A model generated the notes under the pieces. That model was not told the origin of the DNA, ran no database searches, and saw only the letters and a list, made by a program, of their open reading frames with translations. The position numbers and the translations under genes were made by a program. This document shows, one piece after another, positions 18,168-27,963 of a stretch of DNA of 64,000 nt (within the stretch, counting starts at the first letter, position 1; the number at the start of each line of letters is the position of its first letter). This DNA comes from Corallochytrium limacisporum Hawaii. Taxonomy: Eukaryota > Protista > Pluriformea. The stretch spans positions 62,001 to 126,000 of the forward strand of contig PDIP01000017.1 of the NCBI GenBank assembly GCA_002811645.1. Direction: 5' to 3'.

Positions 18168-18750
18168 CAAGAGTATCCTTTGATCTATAACTCTGGTCGA
18201 CAAATTCTCTGCCGGAGTGGAATTAGGCGCCTAGTTCATTACTCAAGTCAGCACATAACCTTTGTAATCTACACCCTGCTTTTGCTGCGATCCTGTCCGC
18301 TCTGGCGAGAACTTGCTCAAGACACAAATTTCTCTTTTCTACACGTGGAGAGTATGTGTCTTTACTGCTGCACAGAGCAAATCCTTCGGAGTCTCAAATC
18401 ACTTGGCCCTCAACAAATACCTCAGCTGCGAGCGAGGTTCTAGCGGTCTTCTTTCCATTGCCTTGCCCTTCAGAAGGACTTCCAAACAATTTGCTCCAGG
18501 TGGCGGACTGCATTCCGGTTCCCAGAGCCAGTCACAACCGTGTCCGCCGATCCGAAACCGCCCGTGGTGTCAGCCAAAGCGCAAGGAACGCACCATGCAC
18601 CCCACCACCTCCCCCACCATCTACCACCACCAGCCGCCAGTAATCGGGTCCCGAGCGTTAGCAAACTTCCCCCTTCGCCGGCTATGGTCAATGTCACCGC
18701 GGTCCCTCTACTTTCTTCCCCCCCCCCCCCCCCTCCCTACGGAACCAAGT

Positions 18751-19708
18751 NNNNNNNNNNNNNNNNNNNNNNNNNNNNNNNNNNNNNNNNNNNNNNNNNN
18801 NNNNNNNNNNNNNNNNNNNNNNNNNNNNNNNNNNNNNNNNNNNNNNNNNNNNNNNNNNNNNNNNNNNNNNNNNNNNNNNNNNNNNNNNNNNNNNNNNNNN
18901 NNNNNNNNNNNNNNNNNNNNNNNNNNNNNNNNNNNNNNNNNNNNNNNNNNNNNNNNNNNNNNNNNNNNNNNNNNNNNNNNNNNNNNNNNNNNNNNNNNNN
19001 NNNNNNNNNNNNNNNNNNNNNNNNNNNNNNNNNNNNNNNNNNNNNNNNNNNNNNNNNNNNNNNNNNNNNNNNNNNNNNNNNNNNNNNNNNNNNNNNNNNN
19101 NNNNNNNNNNNNNNNNNNNNNNNNNNNNNNNNNNNNNNNNNNNNNNNNNNNNNNNNNNNNNNNNNNNNNNNNNNNNNNNNNNNNNNNNNNNNNNNNNNNN
19201 NNNNNNNNNNNNNNNNNNNNNNNNNNNNNNNNNNNNNNNNNNNNNNNNNNNNNNNNNNNNNNNNNNNNNNNNNNNNNNNNNNNNNNNNNNNNNNNNNNNN
19301 NNNNNNNNNNNNNNNNNNNNNNNNNNNNNNNNNNNNNNNNNNNNNNNNNNNNNNNNNNNNNNNNNNNNNNNNNNNNNNNNNNNNNNNNNNNNNNNNNNNN
19401 NNNNNNNNNNNNNNNNNNNNNNNNNNNNNNNNNNNNNNNNNNNNNNNNNNNNNNNNNNNNNNNNNNNNNNNNNNNNNNNNNNNNNNNNNNNNNNNNNNNN
19501 NNNNNNNNNNNNNNNNNNNNNNNNNNNNNNNNNNNNNNNNNNNNNNNNNNNNNNNNNNNNNNNNNNNNNNNNNNNNNNNNNNNNNNNNNNNNNNNNNNNN
19601 NNNNNNNNNNNNNNNNNNNNNNNNNNNNNNNNNNNNNNNNNNNNNNNNNNNNNNNNNNNNNNNNNNNNNNNNNNNNNNNNNNNNNNNNNNNNNNNNNNNN
19701 NNNNNNNN
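18751..19708. other. Assembly gap (N run)
   Basis: 958 N, flanked by a poly-C tract on the left and a GA-rich tract on the right. Confidence 0.99.

Positions 19709-19748: not shown

Positions 19749-19773
<25 letters not shown>
19749..19773. repeat. (GA)n microsatellite
   Basis: About 12 consecutive GA units. Confidence 0.95.
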
Positions 19774-20083
19774 TGAGTGAGAACGTTGTGTCCGTGGAGT
19801 AGTTTGAGAGTTGTGTGTGCTGCATACTTTAATGAGGAACTTGCTCCGAAACGGGACGAAGGGTGAGTGATCTTTGCGATCTGAGTGGAGGGCCGGGCTG
19901 CGAAGCGGAAGGGGGAGGGGGGGAGAGGGAATGTCATTCAAAGTGTATGGAAGCAAAGAATGTGAGATTGGAAATCAAATTTGATTCCCGCTCCGTATAT
20001 TCAAATGACGAATCAATAGGAGGGCCACGGCTCTAGGTACGATACGATATGAGAGGCACCACTATCACTGCTCAAAGAGATGC

Positions 20084-21637
20084 TCACAGTTCCGCAACAT
20101 AGTTGCCACTGTCAGGCACCATCCACCTCATGATGCCTGTAGAATAGGTATCGTTTTCATCAAAGGTACCCAGGACACGCCAGTAGCACATATCGCAACC
20201 GCATCGCATGTCAATGTGATTGATGACGCAGGGGACTGAGCATGCTTGCACCTCAATCCATATTTGTGTGCGTGGTGGCTCGTACTGCCCATCCTCAGCC
20301 GCCACAATGTGAGACGTGCGTACAGATACAGGAGAATAGATGACATACCGACCACTTTTTCCCGCTGGATAGAAATTCTGGCAAACATCACAACAGAATG
20401 CTGGAATCATGTTTTTGGTTAACTCGTCAAGGTCAATGTCAATGGGCTCCTGAGTTCCATTCTTACATTTGCCCAGTTGCAAGCTCATCAACGACCCTAG
20501 GCACAAGGATAATAATGACGGCATTGGCCGGCGCCATGAGGTTACTAGTCTGCGATGCTCTGCTACAAAGGCCTCTGTAGAGATCCGGCGTCGTCCACGA
20601 CGATGCTTCGGTTCGCTCCTCTGGGGAAAGGCAAAGCGCTGCAGAGATCTCAACCCCATGAAATGCACTGGCAGTTCCTGTAGCTCGTGATTGAATCTCA
20701 GATCAATGTACTCGATGCGTGGGCAGAGAAAGAAGCCATTAAGTGGTATAGAGCGAATATCGTTTTCGCTCAAATCCACTGCAGTCACCATTGGCCACTC
20801 AATTTCCTTCAGCTGATCTGCGGAGAGCTTTGCCGGCTTCAGCATTTCTGCATACATGTCTCGTACCATTCTGATGAGGACGCTTGGTTGACACATGTGG
20901 GTCGGCCAGTCCTTCAGCCCGAGTCCATTCAGCCGCAAGATGTTGCTTCCTCGTATCAAGGTCGCTTCGCATCGGTCAATCGCCTGGATATGTGGATTTC
21001 GCAGCAAATTTCTCCCGCAGATCTTCGTATTCGATTCCAAATGTTCATCTAGTGATGTACATGGCACTGATGAGTCATGTGAACGCGCTTTACCCTTGTC
21101 AGTCGAGCTTACGGACTGCTGCCGTTGTCTCAGCTGCTCCAAGTCTTTCAGTATAGCAGTGTCGTACTGTGGACTGATTTTGGCATAGTACGACCGAATG
21201 ATATCTGATAGTTCCTCTGACCCTGTGTCTCGAAGTTCTCGTGCCAAAACAATTAATGCTTTCGCTTGATCGGCCGCCAGTTGCCGTCTTGCAGTTCGAT
21301 CATTGGCTCCAGGGGTTGCGTAGAGCAGGCTACGCACATCGTGCAAAAAGCGCTCGAATGCACAGGCAACAAACGGCCGGTCTCTTCCACTCTTTGATTT
21401 GTATTCTTTAGTGGCAAATCTTAACTCTCTGAGGCATGCCATCCAATCGCCATCTATTCCACTGGCCCGGCTGACCTCACATGCCTTCAAGAATTTATCG
21501 AATGCACGACCACCTGGTGTGATGCGTTCCGGTGGCAGCATTGATGGGAGGTGGATTTCTTCATCTTCGCTTTCGCTACTGGTAGTATCCCATGCTGTAG
21601 CCGCGGCAGCGGCGAAAAAACGACCGAAGCGACCCAT
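20084..21637 (-). CDS. eIF3c-N-terminal-domain / LRR / BC-box / Cys-rich chimeric protein
   Basis: aa 1-150 resemble the eIF3c N-terminus (RFF + SSESEDEE; DWMACLRE; QAKALIVL). LRRs: LRLNGLGLKDWP, VDLSENDIRSIP, IDLRFNHELQELP. BC-box PSLLSLCLGSL. Cys/His cluster CxxC...CSxxC...H...CxCxxC. Confidence 0.8.
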   Translation of the reverse strand: MGRFGRFFAAAAATAWDTTSSESEDEEIHLPSMLPPERITPGGRAFDKFLKACEVSRASGIDGDWMACLRELRFATKEYKSKSGRDRPFVACAFERFLHDVRSLLYATPGANDRTARRQLAADQAKALIVLARELRDTGSEELSDIIRSYYAKISPQYDTAILKDLEQLRQRQQSVSSTDKGKARSHDSSVPCTSLDEHLESNTKICGRNLLRNPHIQAIDRCEATLIRGSNILRLNGLGLKDWPTHMCQPSVLIRMVRDMYAEMLKPAKLSADQLKEIEWPMVTAVDLSENDIRSIPLNGFFLCPRIEYIDLRFNHELQELPVHFMGLRSLQRFAFPQRSEPKHRRGRRRISTEAFVAEHRRLVTSWRRPMPSLLSLCLGSLMSLQLGKCKNGTQEPIDIDLDELTKNMIPAFCCDVCQNFYPAGKSGRYVIYSPVSVRTSHIVAAEDGQYEPPRTQIWIEVQACSVPCVINHIDMRCGCDMCYWRVLGTFDENDTYSTGIMRWMVPDSGNYVAEL

Positions 21638-22144
21638 TCTGGCTTCCTCGGGCCCTCTCCTCCGCTATGGCTTTCCGTTGCCTATCACTTGCATGTCTGG
21701 ATCATATTGCCTTAGCCATACCGTATTCTTGCCAGGACTCTATGTCCATGGTCTGCGCCACATGACCGAACCATAGTTTCACCGTTCATCCACTCAAGTA
21801 GCCCTGCAGGTATCTGTTAGTGTTCAGAGTGAGGCTAGCGAATGGTGACGGCTCCTCTCGCAGCGACTGCCTGTGCGCCGACGTTGCAGTGCAAGTGGTA
21901 CCCCGCCGGCCGGCCCGAGGGGGCGGGTCTCTGAACATCGGCGGCCTGCTCACTCAGGTCAAAAAGTGCAGTCGGCGACTTTCTCTAACGACCGAATCCA
22001 AACCTTTTCCCAAAACTCCCCCGCCCCCCGGGGGGGGGGGGGCCTCAGCCGTTAGTGAAAGTTGTGTCTTTTTTGTAGCTCGTAATTGCGCCGCCAGGCA
22101 TCTACGCCACTGTTTGTGTTTAAGCTACTTCGCGATGGAGTGCT

Positions 22145-22813
22145 ATGCTGCGCACTGCGCACGGTAATAAAATCATCAGTCATAGACTAACCATTGTATA
22201 CTCAGCGTCTGTAGCAGGATTGTCAGTCATGTCGACATCACTCTTGGCCCGGATGCCGGCACGCATCTTCCAGTCTGGAGCTGTGGTGCACAGGACAGGG
22301 GCACTGCGACGCCCTTGTCCCGTGGCACAACGCAGCGTGTACATGTGGATTGAGTATATATTCAATAGAGTAGACTACGCACGCATTAAAGAGGTGGGTC
22401 CAGACCGGGCCTGCCTGGAGTACATTCTGCGGCAGGAGGGGAGATTCAAAGTCAGAGGACACCCGAACTGGATCGACCACGAAAGGGATGTACCTGTGGG
22501 TAAGGTTACATTGACAGACGTTGATATGTCTGGAAGGAATTGTACATCGAACGGGGTCCGTTACTTCCATGGCTGCGACGAACTTGCAAACATTAGCTTC
22601 CGTCGCTGCCCATATTTTGACGATGCAGCCGTGAAGAACATTAGCGATGTGTACGCACTGAGGACCCTGGACATGGGCGAGTGCCCCCTGATCACCAAGG
22701 TATGCCTTGAGCACTTAGAGAAGATGCAGTGGGTCGAAAGGATTAATCTGGATGGGACGAAAATTACAGCCGAGGACTTGAGCCGTGATCTATCCCAAAG
22801 AATACAATTGTAA
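22145..22813 (+). CDS. DMAC2L: ATP synthase subunit s / factor B
   Basis: WIEYIFNRVDYARIKEVGPDRACLEYILR matches the factor B signature, followed by LRRs. Alternative start ATG at 22229. Confidence 0.88.
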   Translation: MLRTAHGNKIISHRLTIVYSASVAGLSVMSTSLLARMPARIFQSGAVVHRTGALRRPCPVAQRSVYMWIEYIFNRVDYARIKEVGPDRACLEYILRQEGRFKVRGHPNWIDHERDVPVGKVTLTDVDMSGRNCTSNGVRYFHGCDELANISFRRCPYFDDAAVKNISDVYALRTLDMGECPLITKVCLEHLEKMQWVERINLDGTKITAEDLSRDLSQRIQL

Positions 22814-22849
22814 GTAAAGCATCACTATATTTCTGTAATATATCAGTCG

Positions 22850-25800
22850 CTACAGAACGGAAGCGCGGGTGTTGTCCTTGAAAAGAGTCATGACCTCCTC
22901 CATCGCAGTGGCCGCTTGTGGCCGAGCTGACTCAGAGGGGAAATGCTTCAGATGGCCCCACAACACATGATCTCGAGGCAGCGCTTGGACGATGTTGGCA
23001 ATTTCTTCCAGGCGGATCACTCCCGCGCCGCTCAGCAAACGGAACTTCATGTAGTACAGGAAGTTGACAACGGTTGCAGTGCTGTGTGTCAAGCGCCCCG
23101 GTGCGTTCTGACTAGAGAGGTGGTGGATTCGACCCTGGCAAAGCAAGCGCAAGAGCGAGACGATCAGAATCTCCGCAGATTCGCCGCCTCCCATGGAGAC
23201 GAGGCAGGGACCAATCATACGGCAAAGGAACAAAATATGGTCAACGCTAATGTCCACCTCAAGTAAGCTCTGGAGCAAGCCATTGATGGACGATAGCTCT
23301 TCTTTTAGACAGGTGAAGAGGTACGCTTGCGTAAAGAAGAGCCATTGAGCCGTATCTGTCACAAGATTGGTTCGCCACGCCTGTGCCCACGGCGTCAGAA
23401 TGGCTGTAGCTTCTATGGAAATGTGTGATCCATCGAAGCCCATCTGTGGCCCGCTCTCCGTGTACAGGCCTCGACAAAGCAAGAAGTCTTGCAGCTGGGT
23501 CCACAGGCGATTCCGCCAAGTACGAGGCAGGCTGCGAAGAAGGATGGCGCAAGCCTGCAGGGCTTCTGCCGTCTCGGTGGGATGGGAGAAAGCTTTGTGG
23601 ATTAGTAACGACACGGCTCGTTCCTCTGCTTCAGCTTCGTTCTCGAGCACGGTTGTGGGCGTGGATGCCATGATCTCACATAGACACAGTCCAAGGGTCT
23701 GATCGAGGTAATGGAGCTCCGAGGTGGGTACACCATACGAGGTATCCGGCTGACCATCAACCAAAGGGGTGAAGAACTTTCCAAGAGATGTGATAGCCTC
23801 CTCAATGATGGCTTCATGTGCAGCGCTTTCTTCCAAATCTCCGCTAATCAATTTCTGCATAGGTGCACTCAACAGCTCTTTGTCAAGCAACTTCAAAAGG
23901 CTGTACGGCTTTCGCGCACCCTCAACGGCTTCTTCACTCTTACCTTCGCCATCCGTCTTTTGTCCACTGAGTATCGAACTGTTTCTGTATAGAGTGATAA
24001 TGGCACGCAAGGAGCGGACACCGTTGGCATGGTACCGCCACAAGCCATCGTAATTGCTGAGAATCAAATCCAAGGTAGTTGCATCCTCCTCCTCAATACA
24101 GCGCATCACACCATAGTCCAGGATGGGGAGGCAGTCATGTATATCACTCGCAAAGTATCTGATGACCCGATGCTCCTGTTTAGTTTGTTCCGTATCTTCT
24201 AGTTCAGAAAGGACCTGGTTATTCGCAAACATCCAGTACACATCAGCTCCCGGGGTAGGTGTTCCAGTTGCCGTCTTTCCGCCTGCCATGGTGTCCAACC
24301 AGACCTTGTAGAGAGCTCGGAATGTCGATTCATCGCCACAAAGAATGTCCACGAATCTGAAGGCGAGGTAGCGATCGTTGCTTTCCCGGTTCCCGCTAAG
24401 CAAATGGAAAAGCATAAGATGGAACGGGATGATCTTATGCTTCCACACCAGATCACTGAGAATCGTTGCAGCAATGTCAAGATCACCTTGATTATTGGTG
24501 CGCAGCACATCCTTCAGCACAAAAGTGATCAGGGACGCAATGTTAGTACCATAGGTTTCAAGACTAAAACTTGCCAACACCTCGTGGACAATGGCGTCTT
24601 TGATGGAGAAGTCCGTCGCCTGGGCTGCTTGCCGCATAATGACAAACACAACGCACAGGAAATATGACTTCCGACTGTCTTCTTCGTAGTGCTTGACTAA
24701 CTTCTGGGTGACTGTGGGGTCGCCGTCGTCTCCCATGAGCAGAATATTGTTCGGATTGTTCTCGTCGTCGTTAATCTCGGCCGCAAACATGTCAATATTG
24801 ACATCCTTCACGGTCTGAGGACCAGATTCTGACTGGCTGTCCAATTCGTTTAGCAGTTCGATCATTTCCCTTGGCATATGCTGACGCGTTTTTTGACTGA
24901 TACCGTCTTCAATCTTCAGATACACTTGGCGTATAAGTTCCAGGGAATGAATACTGACACTTTGCTCAGGCAAGTCCCCAGGAAGTTGCTCTTCCAGTGC
25001 AAGGACCTTCATGACCGCGTACATGATGAGGGTCCTTGACATGCTGAACTGGCTGGGGTTGAGAGTCAGGATTTCAGGAGAAGGCAAGCCCTGAGGAGAA
25101 GCCGAGCTCAGCATGTGGCAAACGGAGGTTGCAATTTTGATCTTTGCGTGCATCCAGTCGACCTTGGTTTGCAGATTCATTGCAGAGTTCAGTACTTTCT
25201 GCAAACACTCGTGTCTTTCAAGTTCCGGAATCTCCAAGACAGCAAGACTTTCTAGATACGCGGTTGCAGACTGAATGAGAGTGGTCTTCAATACCTCATT
25301 CTTGGTATTTACAGCACTGGCAAGATTTTGAGACAGCGTGTTTAGGAAATCAGCAAAAATGTTCCGCACCGAACTGGAACCACGTTTGTCGTGAGCAGCG
25401 GTCAAAACTTGGCACACAGCATTCGGCAAAGCATGCATGATACGGCTAATCGTTAAGAACGCATAAGGACAGGCAGTGCTACGGTCATCCTTGTTTGCAT
25501 TTGGTAGTAAATGGCCCTTCTGCATTGCATTCGTGAGCTCATTGAAGATCAGCAACCGGCATGGAATACTAAGGTAGTCGATGCGATTCAACAGCATAGC
25601 CCCTGTGGCAGCATCTGCAGGGCCAATAGTCTTGTATCCGTTGGCCAGCACACCCTCGCGAAGTTCCACCTTGGGGGCCGTCGCAGGGTTCTTTGGCTGG
25701 ACGAGAACGGACGTTATGCTGGTACTCACATTCTTTGGGGCGGCATGGCTGTACGCTGCAAGCTTCACAAAGTTCGCTTCGTCAAGAGTGCCGTTAAGAA

Positions 25801-27454
25801 AGTCCTTCCCGATGGTATCTTTGCTCTCATTGAACCATTGCTCCGCGCTCTGATAGTACGAGGCGGCTTGTTGAAGCCTCTCTCCGTAGATTAAACCAAC
25901 CCCAGGGTCGTTGGCTCCGCCCGCCACCTTCGCAACGATACCAGTATTTGCAAGAATAGATCCCAAGACGGATGCCTTAATCAGCTCAAAGTCATCATCC
26001 AACTGACCTGCCGCGTCTTCCGCGAGGGAGTCAACCACGTATACACCTGGTGCGTCTTGATGCTCCTCTGGAATTGATGATGAAATGGTGCGAACATGGA
26101 AAGTCTTCTTCATGCGACTGATGCTACACACCTGTGCCAAAATCCAAATCATGGAGTTTGTGCGGACCTGATCCCCGCCCAACTGATGCAGGCGACTTAG
26201 ATTGATCAACAATGACCGTGAGTTGACAATACCAAGGCTGATCAGAGTATAAGTGATGTCTGCAAGAAACTGAAGATGACGATGCATCTTATACGTTGCC
26301 ACATTTCCGGTTCGTCGTAGGTCCGCTTCCTCGACAACGAAGTCTCGGAGGGCCGCTGCCAATGTGTTGTCGGCCGCAGGTAGGTGCCGGTAGATTGCAT
26401 TGAAGCGGAAACGAGGATCGGTCGCGCTGTCACCGGATTGTCCCTTTTCAGTCAAAGCAGATGTTAACATCAAATTGATGATACCCGAAACTGGCTTTTG
26501 CTGTCGAAAGAAGCTTCCCATGACCTGCGCGAAATTCACCCGATCGTTCAATCGCCGTAACGTAGGAATACTGGTAAGAATTTGATTCAGAATGGGAGAC
26601 GTGTTCTCGTCGAAAGCCCATAGTCTGAGGTCACTAACACCGAGTACCGGGGCAATGGATCCCAGCTCAGGAATAAGCAACGCATCCAACTTTGCGATCT
26701 GTGTTTCCAAGGCTCGTGCTTTAGTGGAAAAATAGGGGTGCACATCCGTTGCTCTGACCACAGTCGAAACAATCTTACGCAGCTCTGAATGCAAGAAGTA
26801 AGGAGGAATCAAGGGGTTGAATGGATCAAGGATGTGGTCTAGCATGTTAGCTACCAAATTCAAAACCTCGAAGTCCTGAACATTCTCACTTTGCTTTCCT
26901 TCTAGGTGTTTGTGTACCTGTTTGAAGAATGCGTCAACTGCGAGCCAGCACGCCTTATAACTGCACTGTGGCAGGCATTCGATGATGAACTTGGCCAAGT
27001 CCAGGTCCCGCGGTCCCCGGAAAAGTTCAAAATTGCGCAGCAGTCGGCGGACCATGAGATCGACGTCAAGCAGTCCGCGCTGTGCCAAAGCTGCCAATAA
27101 AGACCGGCAAAAAATAGTGGATTGGCCTCTAGCGGAGAAATCCTCTTCTTGCAGTGAGAGAAGAATCAGTTCAACCATGACCTCCCGGGCATAGTCTTCC
27201 CTTCCAGCCATATAGTCCTGAACAGCCTGTTCATAGATTTCAATAACCCGGCCAACATTCATGGCAGTATCATCGCCGTGACTATCAAAGAGCGCTCTTC
27301 CGACACCCCGTTCGAGTATATTACACCCTTGCATAATTTCGCGACGCATGAGCACGCTAAACTGTGTTTCTGCGTTTCCTGACGTGGTTGTCCCATTGAC
27401 CTGTGGTACGTCTGTACCACTGATCTTGGCCCGTTTGCGAACCTGTGACGACAT
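22850..27454 (-). CDS. MED23: Mediator complex subunit 23
   Basis: About 1530-aa helical protein with MED23-like blocks in the expected order: YKAC, LIPPYFLHSEL, MIWILAQ, YF...LPILDYGVMRCIE, YDGLWRYH, NFLYYMKF. Confidence 0.85.
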   Translation of the reverse strand: MSSQVRKRAKISGTDVPQVNGTTTSGNAETQFSVLMRREIMQGCNILERGVGRALFDSHGDDTAMNVGRVIEIYEQAVQDYMAGREDYAREVMVELILLSLQEEDFSARGQSTIFCRSLLAALAQRGLLDVDLMVRRLLRNFELFRGPRDLDLAKFIIECLPQCSYKACWLAVDAFFKQVHKHLEGKQSENVQDFEVLNLVANMLDHILDPFNPLIPPYFLHSELRKIVSTVVRATDVHPYFSTKARALETQIAKLDALLIPELGSIAPVLGVSDLRLWAFDENTSPILNQILTSIPTLRRLNDRVNFAQVMGSFFRQQKPVSGIINLMLTSALTEKGQSGDSATDPRFRFNAIYRHLPAADNTLAAALRDFVVEEADLRRTGNVATYKMHRHLQFLADITYTLISLGIVNSRSLLINLSRLHQLGGDQVRTNSMIWILAQVCSISRMKKTFHVRTISSSIPEEHQDAPGVYVVDSLAEDAAGQLDDDFELIKASVLGSILANTGIVAKVAGGANDPGVGLIYGERLQQAASYYQSAEQWFNESKDTIGKDFLNGTLDEANFVKLAAYSHAAPKNVSTSITSVLVQPKNPATAPKVELREGVLANGYKTIGPADAATGAMLLNRIDYLSIPCRLLIFNELTNAMQKGHLLPNANKDDRSTACPYAFLTISRIMHALPNAVCQVLTAAHDKRGSSSVRNIFADFLNTLSQNLASAVNTKNEVLKTTLIQSATAYLESLAVLEIPELERHECLQKVLNSAMNLQTKVDWMHAKIKIATSVCHMLSSASPQGLPSPEILTLNPSQFSMSRTLIMYAVMKVLALEEQLPGDLPEQSVSIHSLELIRQVYLKIEDGISQKTRQHMPREMIELLNELDSQSESGPQTVKDVNIDMFAAEINDDENNPNNILLMGDDGDPTVTQKLVKHYEEDSRKSYFLCVVFVIMRQAAQATDFSIKDAIVHEVLASFSLETYGTNIASLITFVLKDVLRTNNQGDLDIAATILSDLVWKHKIIPFHLMLFHLLSGNRESNDRYLAFRFVDILCGDESTFRALYKVWLDTMAGGKTATGTPTPGADVYWMFANNQVLSELEDTEQTKQEHRVIRYFASDIHDCLPILDYGVMRCIEEEDATTLDLILSNYDGLWRYHANGVRSLRAIITLYRNSSILSGQKTDGEGKSEEAVEGARKPYSLLKLLDKELLSAPMQKLISGDLEESAAHEAIIEEAITSLGKFFTPLVDGQPDTSYGVPTSELHYLDQTLGLCLCEIMASTPTTVLENEAEAEERAVSLLIHKAFSHPTETAEALQACAILLRSLPRTWRNRLWTQLQDFLLCRGLYTESGPQMGFDGSHISIEATAILTPWAQAWRTNLVTDTAQWLFFTQAYLFTCLKEELSSINGLLQSLLEVDISVDHILFLCRMIGPCLVSMGGGESAEILIVSLLRLLCQGRIHHLSSQNAPGRLTHSTATVVNFLYYMKFRLLSGAGVIRLEEIANIVQALPRDHVLWGHLKHFPSESARPQAATAMEEVMTLFKDNTRASVL

Positions 27455-27963
27455 GTTTTCGGGGTGATGGTTATGTGTATTTCTTGCCTTGCACCTACAT
27501 GGTTTCACTATTCATTCACTATGAATTGGTCCCTCATATACTATGAATCATACCTTCAGGTCGCTGAGAAAACTTGGATGCTATAAAATACTAACGACCA
27601 CGATCAGTACCGTAAAATACGTTATATTGGATTCATTGCCGTAATTGAATTCGTTGCCGTCGCTGGTCGGATGGTTCCCCTTCGCAGGGGGCGGGACACA
27701 CTCCCAATCGCCCTCGTCCGAAGCAGGGACCGCTTTTACCGCCCGTCCGCGCACCGCAATATATAACCAAAAACCAACAACACCGGAAGGGCCGCGCTTT
27801 CCCAATTGTAAGAGTACCAGGCGGTGGGGAGAAGAGGCGGGAAAAACATCTGAGCCAGAGCTGATCTGAATTAATCAATTACATATAGATATAATCAATA
27901 TTTTCATGGCCCGCCACACTGAGCAGGAGGAAACTTGAACGATGGGATGAAGTTTTGATACAA

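What the first reader, a model, noticed from the sequence alone, without database searches (positions are those of the whole stretch)
20084..21637. eIF3c N-terminal domain fused to an LRR/BC-box module: candidate ubiquitin-ligase receptor targeting translation initiation
Seen: the N-terminus MGRFGRFF...SSESEDEE mirrors the eIF3c start MSRFF...SESE. aa 46-79 (FDKFLKACEVSRASGIDGDWMACLRELRFATKEY) align without gaps to human eIF3c as I recall it ([34 protein letters not shown]), with F, R, D, C, L, E, K and Y identical. RRQLAADQAKALIVLARELR matches [20 protein letters not shown]. There is no PCI domain. Instead there are 3-4 LRRs, PSLLSLCLGSL (aa 373-383, BC-box consensus) and a Cys/His cluster (C416/419, C466/470, H474, C479/481/484), the layout of LRRC58-type proteins. 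Known: the eIF3c/Nip1 NTD binds eIF1, eIF5 and the 40S subunit and affects start-codon selection; BC-box proteins are CUL2/CUL5-Elongin BC substrate receptors. Inference: a duplicated eIF3c NTD reused as bait or decoy to recruit eIF1, eIF5 or 40S for ubiquitylation, potentially tuning initiation stringency. I know of no described protein with this architecture.
Basis: partly seen in the sequence, partly recalled or inferred. Interest (0 to 1): 0.85.

Follow-up and report, generated by a model that had tools for sequence, protein, structure and literature searches.

The report
Orphan LRR protein, eIF3c-like head
A real, transcribed gene found only in the unicellular animal relative Corallochytrium encodes a three-part protein whose N-terminal part weakly resembles the start of translation factor eIF3c, but neither that kinship nor a ubiquitin-ligase role is established.

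Summary
The 517-aa ORF (window 20084-21637, minus strand) is real. It is intronless, and transcript-like contigs from two studies cover it as a single unit. The genome is Corallochytrium limacisporum, which also has a normal 924-aa eIF3c elsewhere.

The protein is an orphan. I found no relative among 1.84 billion cluster representatives and no paralog in its own genome.

- **eIF3c likeness:** HMMER, Pfam, BLASTP, PDB and fold searches do not see it. Targeted profile tests do: global hhalign gives P 1.7e-4 over aa 1-156, and no real-protein or locally shuffled control came close. The most conserved eIF3c motif (KRVVRSAKDKRFEEL) is missing, and the genome's own eIF3c is not the closest match. 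I put homology at about 0.4.
- **LRRs:** only 3-4 weak repeats, below Pfam's cut-off.
- **BC-box:** the pattern fits, but 8% of shuffled versions of this protein also carry one. No cullin box follows it.
- **Layout:** LRR, then BC-like helix, then Cys-rich tail, the same order as LRRC58.

The proposed ubiquitylation of eIF1, eIF5 or the 40S subunit is untested speculation. Other first-reader notes report LRR/BC-box/Cys-cluster proteins elsewhere in this genome; I could not check them.

The parts
19817..21766 (-). Transcript-like unit: about 130 nt of 5' leader, the coding sequence, and about 267 nt of 3' trailer
   Evidence: A whole contig of run X1 (1950 nt, no differences) lies at 19817-21766. 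A whole contig of run X2 (1919 nt, 9 substitutions and 1 insertion) lies at 19819-21736. The spacer is almost uncovered: nothing long lies on 21767-22279 in X1 or 21737-22200 in X2.
20084..21637 (-). Coding sequence, 517 aa plus stop, no intron
   Evidence: The open frame is 526 codons and this is the first ATG. Between the two strains there are 3 synonymous and 3 non-synonymous differences.
21548..21637 (-). aa 1-30: N-terminal tail with RFF (aa 6-8) and the acidic/serine run SSESEDEE (aa 20-27)
   Evidence: Read directly from the sequence. It aligns to the MSRFF plus acidic/Ser start of eIF3c in HMMER (1.8 bits) and in global hhalign.
21110..21520 (-). aa 40-176: helical bundle of five to six helices; candidate diverged eIF3c-NTD-like domain
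   Evidence: AF2 model of aa 36-180: pLDDT 65.7, pTM 0.61, six helices. Local hhalign aligns aa 63-151 to eIF3c 76-162 with P 9e-4. Mean Smith-Waterman score against 29 eIF3c helical cores is 40.9; the best of 1086 real tiles scores 38.7.
20963..21109 (-). aa 177-225: linker with no confident predicted structure
   Evidence: pLDDT about 28-30 in this stretch.
20618..20962 (-). aa 226-340: short leucine-rich-repeat region, 3-4 repeats
   Evidence: Pfam LRR_8 at aa 284-333, 23.4 bits, E 5e-5, below the cut-off. PDB LRR proteins such as TLR3 match aa 275-336 at E 1e-3. A generic LRR protein, P0122, matches at E 4e-7. NCBIfam XopAC LRR region matches aa 212-333 at E 0.009.
20489..20521 (-). aa 373-383: PSLLSLCLGSL, a BC-box-like helix
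   Evidence: It fits [STP]L...C...[AILV] at aa 374-383, but 7.8% of shuffles of this protein also carry such a match. It is predicted helical in a low-confidence model. No Cul2 or Cul5 box pattern follows.
20087..20395 (-). aa 415-517: Cys/His-rich C-terminal domain with predicted beta strands; possible zinc site(s)
   Evidence: C415, 416, 419, 466, 470, H474, C479, 481, 484. No Pfam or NCBIfam hit. No paralog in the genome.

Best explanation
This is a real, transcribed, intronless gene restricted to Corallochytrium. It encodes a modular adaptor protein with three parts:
1. An N-terminal acidic tail plus a five- to six-helix bundle.
2. Three to four leucine-rich repeats.
3. A basic linker, a BC-box-like helix and a Cys/His-rich tail, in the same order as the cullin-2/5 receptor LRRC58.

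The mechanism I consider most likely is that it works as a substrate-receptor-type adaptor. The helix at aa 373-386 would dock on Elongin C, which this genome has. The LRRs and the extra N-terminal bundle would bind the partner.

The N-terminal bundle may be a very diverged copy of the eIF3c N-terminal domain. One route would be duplication of the 5' part of the gene, which would keep the exact N-terminus.

What is shown: the gene is real, it is transcribed as one unit, it is an orphan, it has LRRs, the motifs are present, and its likeness to the eIF3c NTD exceeds all controls run.

What is inferred, with my odds:
- Descent of the NTD from eIF3c: about 0.4.
- A working BC-box: about 0.35-0.4.
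- Any link to eIF1, eIF5 or the 40S subunit: about 0.05.
For: - The ORF is continuous and the protein has no relatives.
- Transcript-like contigs from two studies span the whole gene.
- LRR hits.
- A BC-box pattern sits directly after the LRRs and is followed by a Cys cluster. This parallels the published LRRC58 order of LRRs, BC-box, Cul-box and C-terminal zinc/Cys region.
- Protein-language-model neighbours include LRRC58 (0.95) and LRR1 (0.94) clusters, both CUL2 receptors. This is a lead only.
- The genome encodes Elongin C (P0123) and four cullins.
- eIF3c NTD likeness: local hhalign P 9e-4 and global P 1.7e-4 over aa 1-156.
- All 253 real tiles score 11.1 or less, and all 316 window-shuffles 12.8 or less, against 23.7 for the real sequence.
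- The helical core scores above all 1086 real tiles.
- The model has six helices, five of them across the stretch that aligns to eIF3c. In eIF3c that region is described as a five-helix bundle (PMC8599844).
Against: - There is no significant hit in any untargeted search: Pfam, HMMER, BLASTP at E 0.47 against the genome's own eIF3c, PDB sequences, Foldseek, or the genome-wide scan with the NTD profile.
- hhalign's own probability is 22-24%.
- The KRVVRSAKDKRFEEL block, the best-conserved part of the eIF3c NTD, is missing.
- The genome's own eIF3c ranks only 63-70 of 120 in similarity.
- Against the first 230 aa of eIF3c, low-complexity stretches included, 2% of real tiles score as high.
- The BC-box pattern has an 8% chance rate, and no cullin box follows it.
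- There are only 3-4 weak LRRs, against nine in LRRC58.
- The full-length structure model is unusable (pLDDT 37).
- Fold matches of the NTD are generic helical bundles.
Confidence: 0.35

Rival explanations
1. This is a lineage-specific LRR scaffold with a generic up-down helical bundle and a zinc-binding tail. The eIF3c likeness and the BC-box are both chance or convergent, and the protein has no role in translation or cullin ligases.
For: - The protein is an orphan in 1.84 billion representatives.
- No untargeted search finds eIF3c.
- The NTD model matches only generic four-helix bundles such as FAT and talin at Z 8-10, a range that is non-specific for helical proteins.
- The BC-box pattern occurs in 7.8% of shuffles, and no Cul box is present.
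- Three of six strain differences change the protein, and one removes Cys391.
Against: The co-linear match to the eIF3c NTD starts at the true N-terminus and runs to the end of the domain. It exceeds all 253 real-tile, 316 window-shuffle and 1086 core-tile controls. The LRR, BC-like helix, Cys-tail order matches LRRC58.
Confidence: 0.35
2. This is an eIF3c-NTD paralog that acts in translation initiation without any ligase. For example, it could compete with eIF3c for eIF5 or eIF1, or sit on the 40S interface, with the LRR and Cys domains tethering it to another partner.
For: Same NTD evidence as above. The N-terminal RFF plus acidic/Ser tail is retained; from my own knowledge of yeast NIP1 work, this is the eIF5-binding part of eIF3c.
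Against: The KRVVRSAKDKRFEEL block is not conserved. It lies just before the helical bundle, in the position where yeast structures place the tail that links the bundle to eIF1 and the eIF3b RRM (PMC8599844). Homology itself is unproven.
Confidence: 0.1
3. One reading: a duplicated eIF3c NTD serves as bait on an Elongin BC-cullin receptor, which ubiquitylates eIF1, eIF5 or 40S proteins and so tunes start-codon stringency.
For: It needs both uncertain parts to be true. The evidence for each is listed under the best explanation.
Against: By my own odds the two parts together come to about 0.15. Nothing bears on the substrates. The putative eIF1-contacting motif is missing.
Confidence: 0.05
4. 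This is an artefact: a misassembled chimera, or a decaying non-functional ORF.
For: No homologs anywhere. The strain comparison gives only a modest sign of constraint: 3 non-synonymous against 3 synonymous changes.
Against: A 517-codon open frame in DNA of about 51% GC. The same collinear unit is recovered in two runs from two studies, one of them a different strain with 9 substitutions and no frame break.
Confidence: 0.03

Closest known systems
eIF3c / NIP1 N-terminal domain (N-terminal part of Pfam PF05470 eIF-3c_N)
   Same: - Starts at the very N-terminus with RFF followed by an acidic/serine run.
- Then comes a run of predicted helices, five across about 115 aa in the aligned region.
- Matching landmarks appear in the same order: (R)xF[DE][KE][FL], DW, P-F, and [KR][KR]x[LM]xxxxAKALxxLxxxLR.
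- The spacing from F46 to W65 (19 aa) and from W65 to K126 (61 aa) is the same as in the Corallochytrium eIF3c.
   Different: - About 20% identity, and no significant HMMER or Pfam match.
- The KRVVRSAKDKRFEEL block is missing.
- The rest of eIF-3c_N and the PCI domain are absent.
- It is not closer to its own genome's eIF3c than to vertebrate ones.
LRRC58, an Elongin BC / CUL2-CUL5 substrate receptor for CDO1 (PDB 9T7V; PMC13156300; bioRxiv 10.1101/2025.09.23.678073)
   Same: The module order is LRRs, BC-box-type helix, second helix, then a Cys-containing C-terminal region. An LRRC58 cluster is among the nearest language-model neighbours at 0.95.
   Different: - 3-4 weak LRRs instead of nine.
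- No recognisable Cul2 box.
- A longer Cys/His tail (about 100 aa), with all its cysteines after the BC-like helix.
- An extra N-terminal region of about 225 aa ahead of the LRRs.
- No detectable sequence similarity. I could not compare directly because no LRRC58 sequence could be obtained.
LRR1 (PPIL5), the CUL2 receptor with a PH domain plus LRRs
   Same: An N-terminal extra domain, LRRs and a BC-box. LRR1 clusters are among the language-model neighbours at 0.94.
   Different: There is no PH_LRR1 domain. The genome's only PF25344 hit is weak and lies elsewhere.
Generic up-down four/five-helix bundles (FAT domains of p130Cas and Pyk2, talin R7/R8, CheA P1)
   Same: These are the best structural matches of the NTD model, at Z 8-10 and rmsd 3.5-4.1 over about 100 residues.
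   Different: This Z range is non-specific for helical bundles by the tool's own calibration, and sequence identity is 8-10%.

Membership tests
eIF3c N-terminal domain | Significant match to the family profile (Pfam PF05470, or a profile of eIF3c NTDs) | tested here: not met
   No PF05470 hit at E up to 10. My own HMM of 109 NTDs gives 3.2 bits, and 13 of 2000 shuffles reach that. A genome-wide scan with the NTD alignment finds only the canonical gene.
eIF3c N-terminal domain | M-S-R-F-F at the N-terminus followed by an acidic/serine box | tested here: met
   RFF at aa 6-8 and SSESEDEE at aa 20-27. SESEDEE is also present in the Corallochytrium eIF3c. The spacer between the two is 11 aa, longer than the 1-3 aa typical of eIF3c in A1.
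eIF3c N-terminal domain | The KRVVRSAKDKRFEEL block, the most conserved columns of the NTD (R49, V51, S53, D56, K57, R58, E61 in alignment A1) | tested here: not met
   Global hhalign deletes this block. At best a remnant, GRAFDKFL, remains.
eIF3c N-terminal domain | Five-helix bundle carrying the INDW, P-FYI and KKKMN..NAKALN..KQK.RK landmarks | tested here: inconclusive
   - Local hhalign P 9e-4 with probability 22%; global P 1.7e-4.
- The score is above all real-tile and window-shuffle controls.
- The AF2 model shows six helices, five of them in the aligned stretch.
- Fold search finds only generic bundles and no eIF3c chain.
eIF3c N-terminal domain | Continues into the rest of eIF-3c_N and a PCI domain | tested here: not met
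   Only an LRR hit lies downstream. The canonical 924-aa eIF3c, with PF05470 and PCI, lies on another contig.
eIF3c N-terminal domain | Binds eIF1, the eIF5 C-terminal domain and the 40S interface | not testable with these tools
   Needs pull-downs or co-sedimentation.
BC-box (Elongin BC) cullin-2/5 substrate receptors, LRRC58 type | BC-box consensus [STP]LxxxCxxx[AILV] on a helix | tested here: met
   SLLSLCLGSL at aa 374-383. The chance rate is 7.8% of shuffles, so it carries little weight.
BC-box (Elongin BC) cullin-2/5 substrate receptors, LRRC58 type | Cul2 box (hydrophobic-P-x-x-hydrophobic-x-x-x-hydrophobic) or Cul5 box (LPxP) within about 10-25 aa downstream | tested here: not met
   No pattern match downstream of aa 383. 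Only a loosely similar helix, EPIDIDLDELTKNMIPAF, is present.
BC-box (Elongin BC) cullin-2/5 substrate receptors, LRRC58 type | Substrate-binding LRR domain (nine LRRs in LRRC58) | tested here: inconclusive
   Only 3-4 repeats. LRR_8 scores 23.4 bits, below the 27-bit cut-off, and is among the weakest LRR_8 matches in the genome.
BC-box (Elongin BC) cullin-2/5 substrate receptors, LRRC58 type | Zinc-binding cysteines flanking the cullin-binding region | tested here: inconclusive
   A Cys/His cluster exists at 415-484, but all of it lies after the BC-like helix. There is no homology or usable structure by which to judge it.
BC-box (Elongin BC) cullin-2/5 substrate receptors, LRRC58 type | Physical binding to Elongin C / Elongin B and a cullin | not testable with these tools
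   Needs a binding experiment. The partners exist in the genome.
BC-box (Elongin BC) cullin-2/5 substrate receptors, LRRC58 type | Sequence homology to LRRC58, LRRC28 or LRR1 family members | not tested
   No reference sequence of these families could be obtained. No LRRC58 or LRR1 chain was among the PDB sequence hits.

The most novel reading that the evidence does not exclude
A chimeric gene arose when the 5' part of eIF3c (start codon, acidic tail and helical bundle) was duplicated and fused to an LRR/BC-box cullin-receptor module. The result is a ubiquitin-ligase adaptor that carries a translation-initiation-factor domain, and so a direct wire between cullin ligases and the 43S/48S initiation machinery in a close unicellular relative of animals.
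Probability: 0.12. Interest if true: 0.75.

Novelty: new variant of a known kind. Interest (0 to 1): 0.45.

Why it matters
If the head domain really descends from the eIF3c NTD, this would be the first case I know of in which that domain occurs outside eIF3c. It would also be an example of an orphan gene built by partial duplication of an essential translation factor.

If the tail also docks on Elongin BC, the protein would physically link a cullin ligase to initiation factors. That would be testable in Corallochytrium.

If neither holds, it is one more lineage-specific LRR protein of unknown partner. Its use is then mainly as a caution that short-motif resemblances (BC-box, acidic tails) are cheap. 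The gene's restriction to one genus limits its general reach either way.

Tried and rejected
- **Homolog searches.** Whole-protein searches found only the protein itself plus one generic LRR protein. No paralog of the whole protein or of aa 345-517 exists in the genome.
- **Family libraries.** Pfam and NCBIfam scans of the three parts gave nothing beyond weak LRR hits.
- **PDB by sequence.** A phmmer search with aa 1-200 gave one chance hit, a proteasome beta subunit at E 0.91, and no eIF3c.
- **Language-model search of aa 1-180.** No usable hit.
- **Full-length AF2.** pLDDT 37, unusable.
- **AF2 of aa 36-180.** Moderate quality, pLDDT 65.7. Foldseek against PDB gave nothing better than E 0.57. 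VIA-align against 48,161 chains gave only generic helical bundles.
- **Elongin C docking.** Complex prediction of Corallochytrium Elongin C (P0123) with aa 355-430 returned 'no answer' (median 0.32, mark 0.34). I do not use it as evidence either way.
- **Recent duplication from the genome's own eIF3c.** Rejected as a simple story, because that protein ranks only 63-70 of 120 eIF3c sequences in similarity.
- **Raw Smith-Waterman against the first 230 aa of eIF3c.** Misleading, because low-complexity charged tiles score as high (15 of 775). I trimmed the targets to the helical core to fix this.
- **Elongin C gene model.** The gene has one intron.
- **Parallel hhalign runs.** Two scripts timed out and were re-run serially.
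Full report
**What and where**

The window comes from a 24.1-Mb genome in 286 contigs. The genome's own eIF3c is the EukProt entry Clim_evm59s108, and its Elongin C is Clim_evm61s150. That identifies the organism as Corallochytrium limacisporum, a unicellular relative of animals.

The finding is a 517-codon ORF on the minus strand at 20084-21637. The open frame is 526 codons and the annotated ATG is the first one in it. Neighbouring genes are also long intronless ORFs, for example a 1552-aa Mediator Med23 homolog.

**Is it a real gene, and is it one gene?**

Two public runs from two studies each hold a contig that lies entirely on this gene. X1 has 1950 nt at 19817-21766 with no differences. 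X2 has 1919 nt at 19819-21736 with nine substitutions and one insertion.

The intergenic stretch upstream is almost uncovered, and the neighbouring genes sit on separate contigs with different depths. The runs are only guessed to be RNA. But contigs that begin and end at gene borders, in assemblies of 13-14 Mb from a 24-Mb genome, look like transcripts.

Both halves of the protein lie on one collinear molecule in two strains, so misassembly is excluded. Of the six coding differences between the strains, three are synonymous and three are not (F97L, I352V, C391G). That is too few to measure selection.

**Relatives**

There are none. The word-indexed search of 5.8 billion clusters returned only the protein itself. 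The exhaustive phmmer search of 1.84 billion representatives added one generic LRR protein, which matches aa 285-336 at E 4e-7. The genome has no paralog of the whole protein or of the C-terminal 173 aa.

**The observation**

- the N-terminal RFF and SSESEDEE;
- the ungapped 34-aa stretch with eight identities to mammalian eIF3c;
- the AKAL...LR stretch;
- weak LRRs;
- PSLLSLCLGSL at aa 373-383;
- the Cys/His cluster at aa 415-484.

A canonical eIF3c of 924 aa lies on another contig, with PF05470 at 585 bits plus a PCI domain.

**Is the head an eIF3c N-terminal domain?**

Untargeted methods say no:
- Pfam eIF-3c_N gives no hit, even at E 10.
- An HMM I built from 109 eIF3c N-termini gives 3.2 bits, reached by 13 of 2000 shuffles.
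- BLASTP against the genome's own eIF3c gives a co-linear alignment (aa 2-154 against 3-158) at E 0.47. The best pairwise case, an amphibian eIF3c, gives E 0.024.
- Scanning the genome with the NTD profile finds only the canonical gene.
- PDB sequence and fold searches do not return eIF3c.

Targeted profile tests say the likeness is not random:
- Local hhalign against 30 diverse eIF3c NTDs aligns aa 63-151 to eIF3c 76-162 with P 9e-4 and probability 22%.
- Global hhalign aligns aa 1-156 to the whole NTD with score 23.7 and P 1.7e-4.
- 253 real 160-aa tiles from 200 kb of the same genome have mean 3.3, sd 2.5 and maximum 11.1.
- 316 versions of the query shuffled within 16-aa windows, which keeps local composition, have mean 1.6, sd 2.2 and maximum 12.8.
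- A separate method agrees. I took the mean Smith-Waterman score of aa 40-160 against 29 eIF3c helical cores. The real sequence scores 40.9. The 1086 real tiles have mean 25.8, sd 3.0 and maximum 38.7.

Other points for homology:
- The match begins at the true N-terminus in both proteins.
- The landmark spacings are identical to those of the Corallochytrium eIF3c: F46 to W65 is 19 aa and W65 to K126 is 61 aa.
- An AF2 model of aa 36-180 (pLDDT 65.7) shows six helices, five of them across the aligned stretch. In eIF3c this region is described as a five-helix bundle at the 40S interface (PMC8599844).

Points against homology:
- The best-conserved block of the family, KRVVRSAKDKRFEEL, is missing.
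- The genome's own eIF3c is not the most similar family member (rank 63-70 of 120).
- With untrimmed targets, low-complexity tiles score as high as the query.

Extrapolating the control tails puts the pairwise p between about 1e-4 and 1e-6. Given how unlikely any one particular family is beforehand, I put homology at roughly 0.4.

**Is the tail a cullin-receptor module?**

The LRRs are real but few and weak. LRR_8 scores 23.4 bits, below the cut-off, and is among the weakest such hits in a genome with more than 100.

SLLSLCLGSL fits the BC-box pattern, but 7.8% of shuffles of this Cys-rich protein also contain such a match. No Cul2 or Cul5 box pattern follows it.

In its favour, the motif sits just after the LRRs and is followed by a second predicted helix and a Cys/His cluster. 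The helix calls come from the low-confidence full-length model. That is the published order in LRRC58: LRRs, BC-box, Cul-box, then a C-terminal region with a zinc loop (PMC13156300; bioRxiv 10.1101/2025.09.23.678073).

LRRC58 and LRR1 clusters are among the nearest protein-language-model neighbours. That is a lead, not a test. The genome has Elongin C and four cullins. I put a working BC-box at about 0.35-0.4.

Other first-reader notes report several LRR/BC-box/Cys-cluster proteins elsewhere in this genome. I could not fetch those loci, so they remain unchecked leads.

**Verdict**

The gene and the listed features are confirmed. The architecture 'eIF3c NTD fused to a BC-box LRR receptor' is possible (about 0.15 for both parts together) but not established. 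The proposed function, recruiting eIF1, eIF5 or the 40S subunit for ubiquitylation, has no support beyond the analogy.

The safest description is an expressed, genus-restricted, three-module adaptor protein with a head that looks eIF3c-like at the limit of detection. It is worth a proper HHpred search and an Elongin BC binding test.

Noticed in passing
window 18740-19700 (approx.): A run of about 960 N lies just downstream of the gene's 3' end. It is either an assembly gap or withheld sequence. It is flanked by GA/CT-rich simple sequence that translates as ...ERERERE. It does not touch the ORF.
   Followed up: no
window 22850-27508 (-): An intronless 1552-aa ORF with a Mediator Med23 domain (PF11573, E 1.9e-20). 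This fits a holozoan genome.
   Followed up: partly
window 22145-22813 (+) and 22850 (-): The 222-aa ORF has no Pfam hit; another first-reader note calls it ATP synthase factor B. Its coding sequence ends 36 bp from the end of the convergent Med23 coding sequence. Single contigs of X1 (22280-23309) and X2 (22201 onward) bridge both genes, so the 3' ends of the two transcripts probably overlap.
   Followed up: no
window 22018-22108: The intergenic spacer upstream of the gene holds a C-run followed by a G-rich run (around 22020-22050). It is covered only by very short, low-depth contigs.
   Followed up: no
L004:1229-1650 (-) = G000:C179: The Elongin C gene has one intron between SGPG and QFSENE, in a region of the genome where most genes seen here are intronless. 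The spliced product equals database protein P0123 (107 aa).
   Followed up: partly
window 19760-23500: Run X2 differs from the assembly at 14 substitutions and one insertion over 3.7 kb, while X1 is identical. The two studies therefore probably sequenced different strains or isolates.
   Followed up: partly
G000, several contigs: The genome holds more than 100 LRR_8 matches, spread over roughly 50 open frames. Several of those frames are 350-410 codons long, about the size of LRRC58. Other first-reader notes describe LRR/BC-box/Cys-cluster proteins among the genome's LRR proteins, so this family may be expanded here.
   Followed up: no
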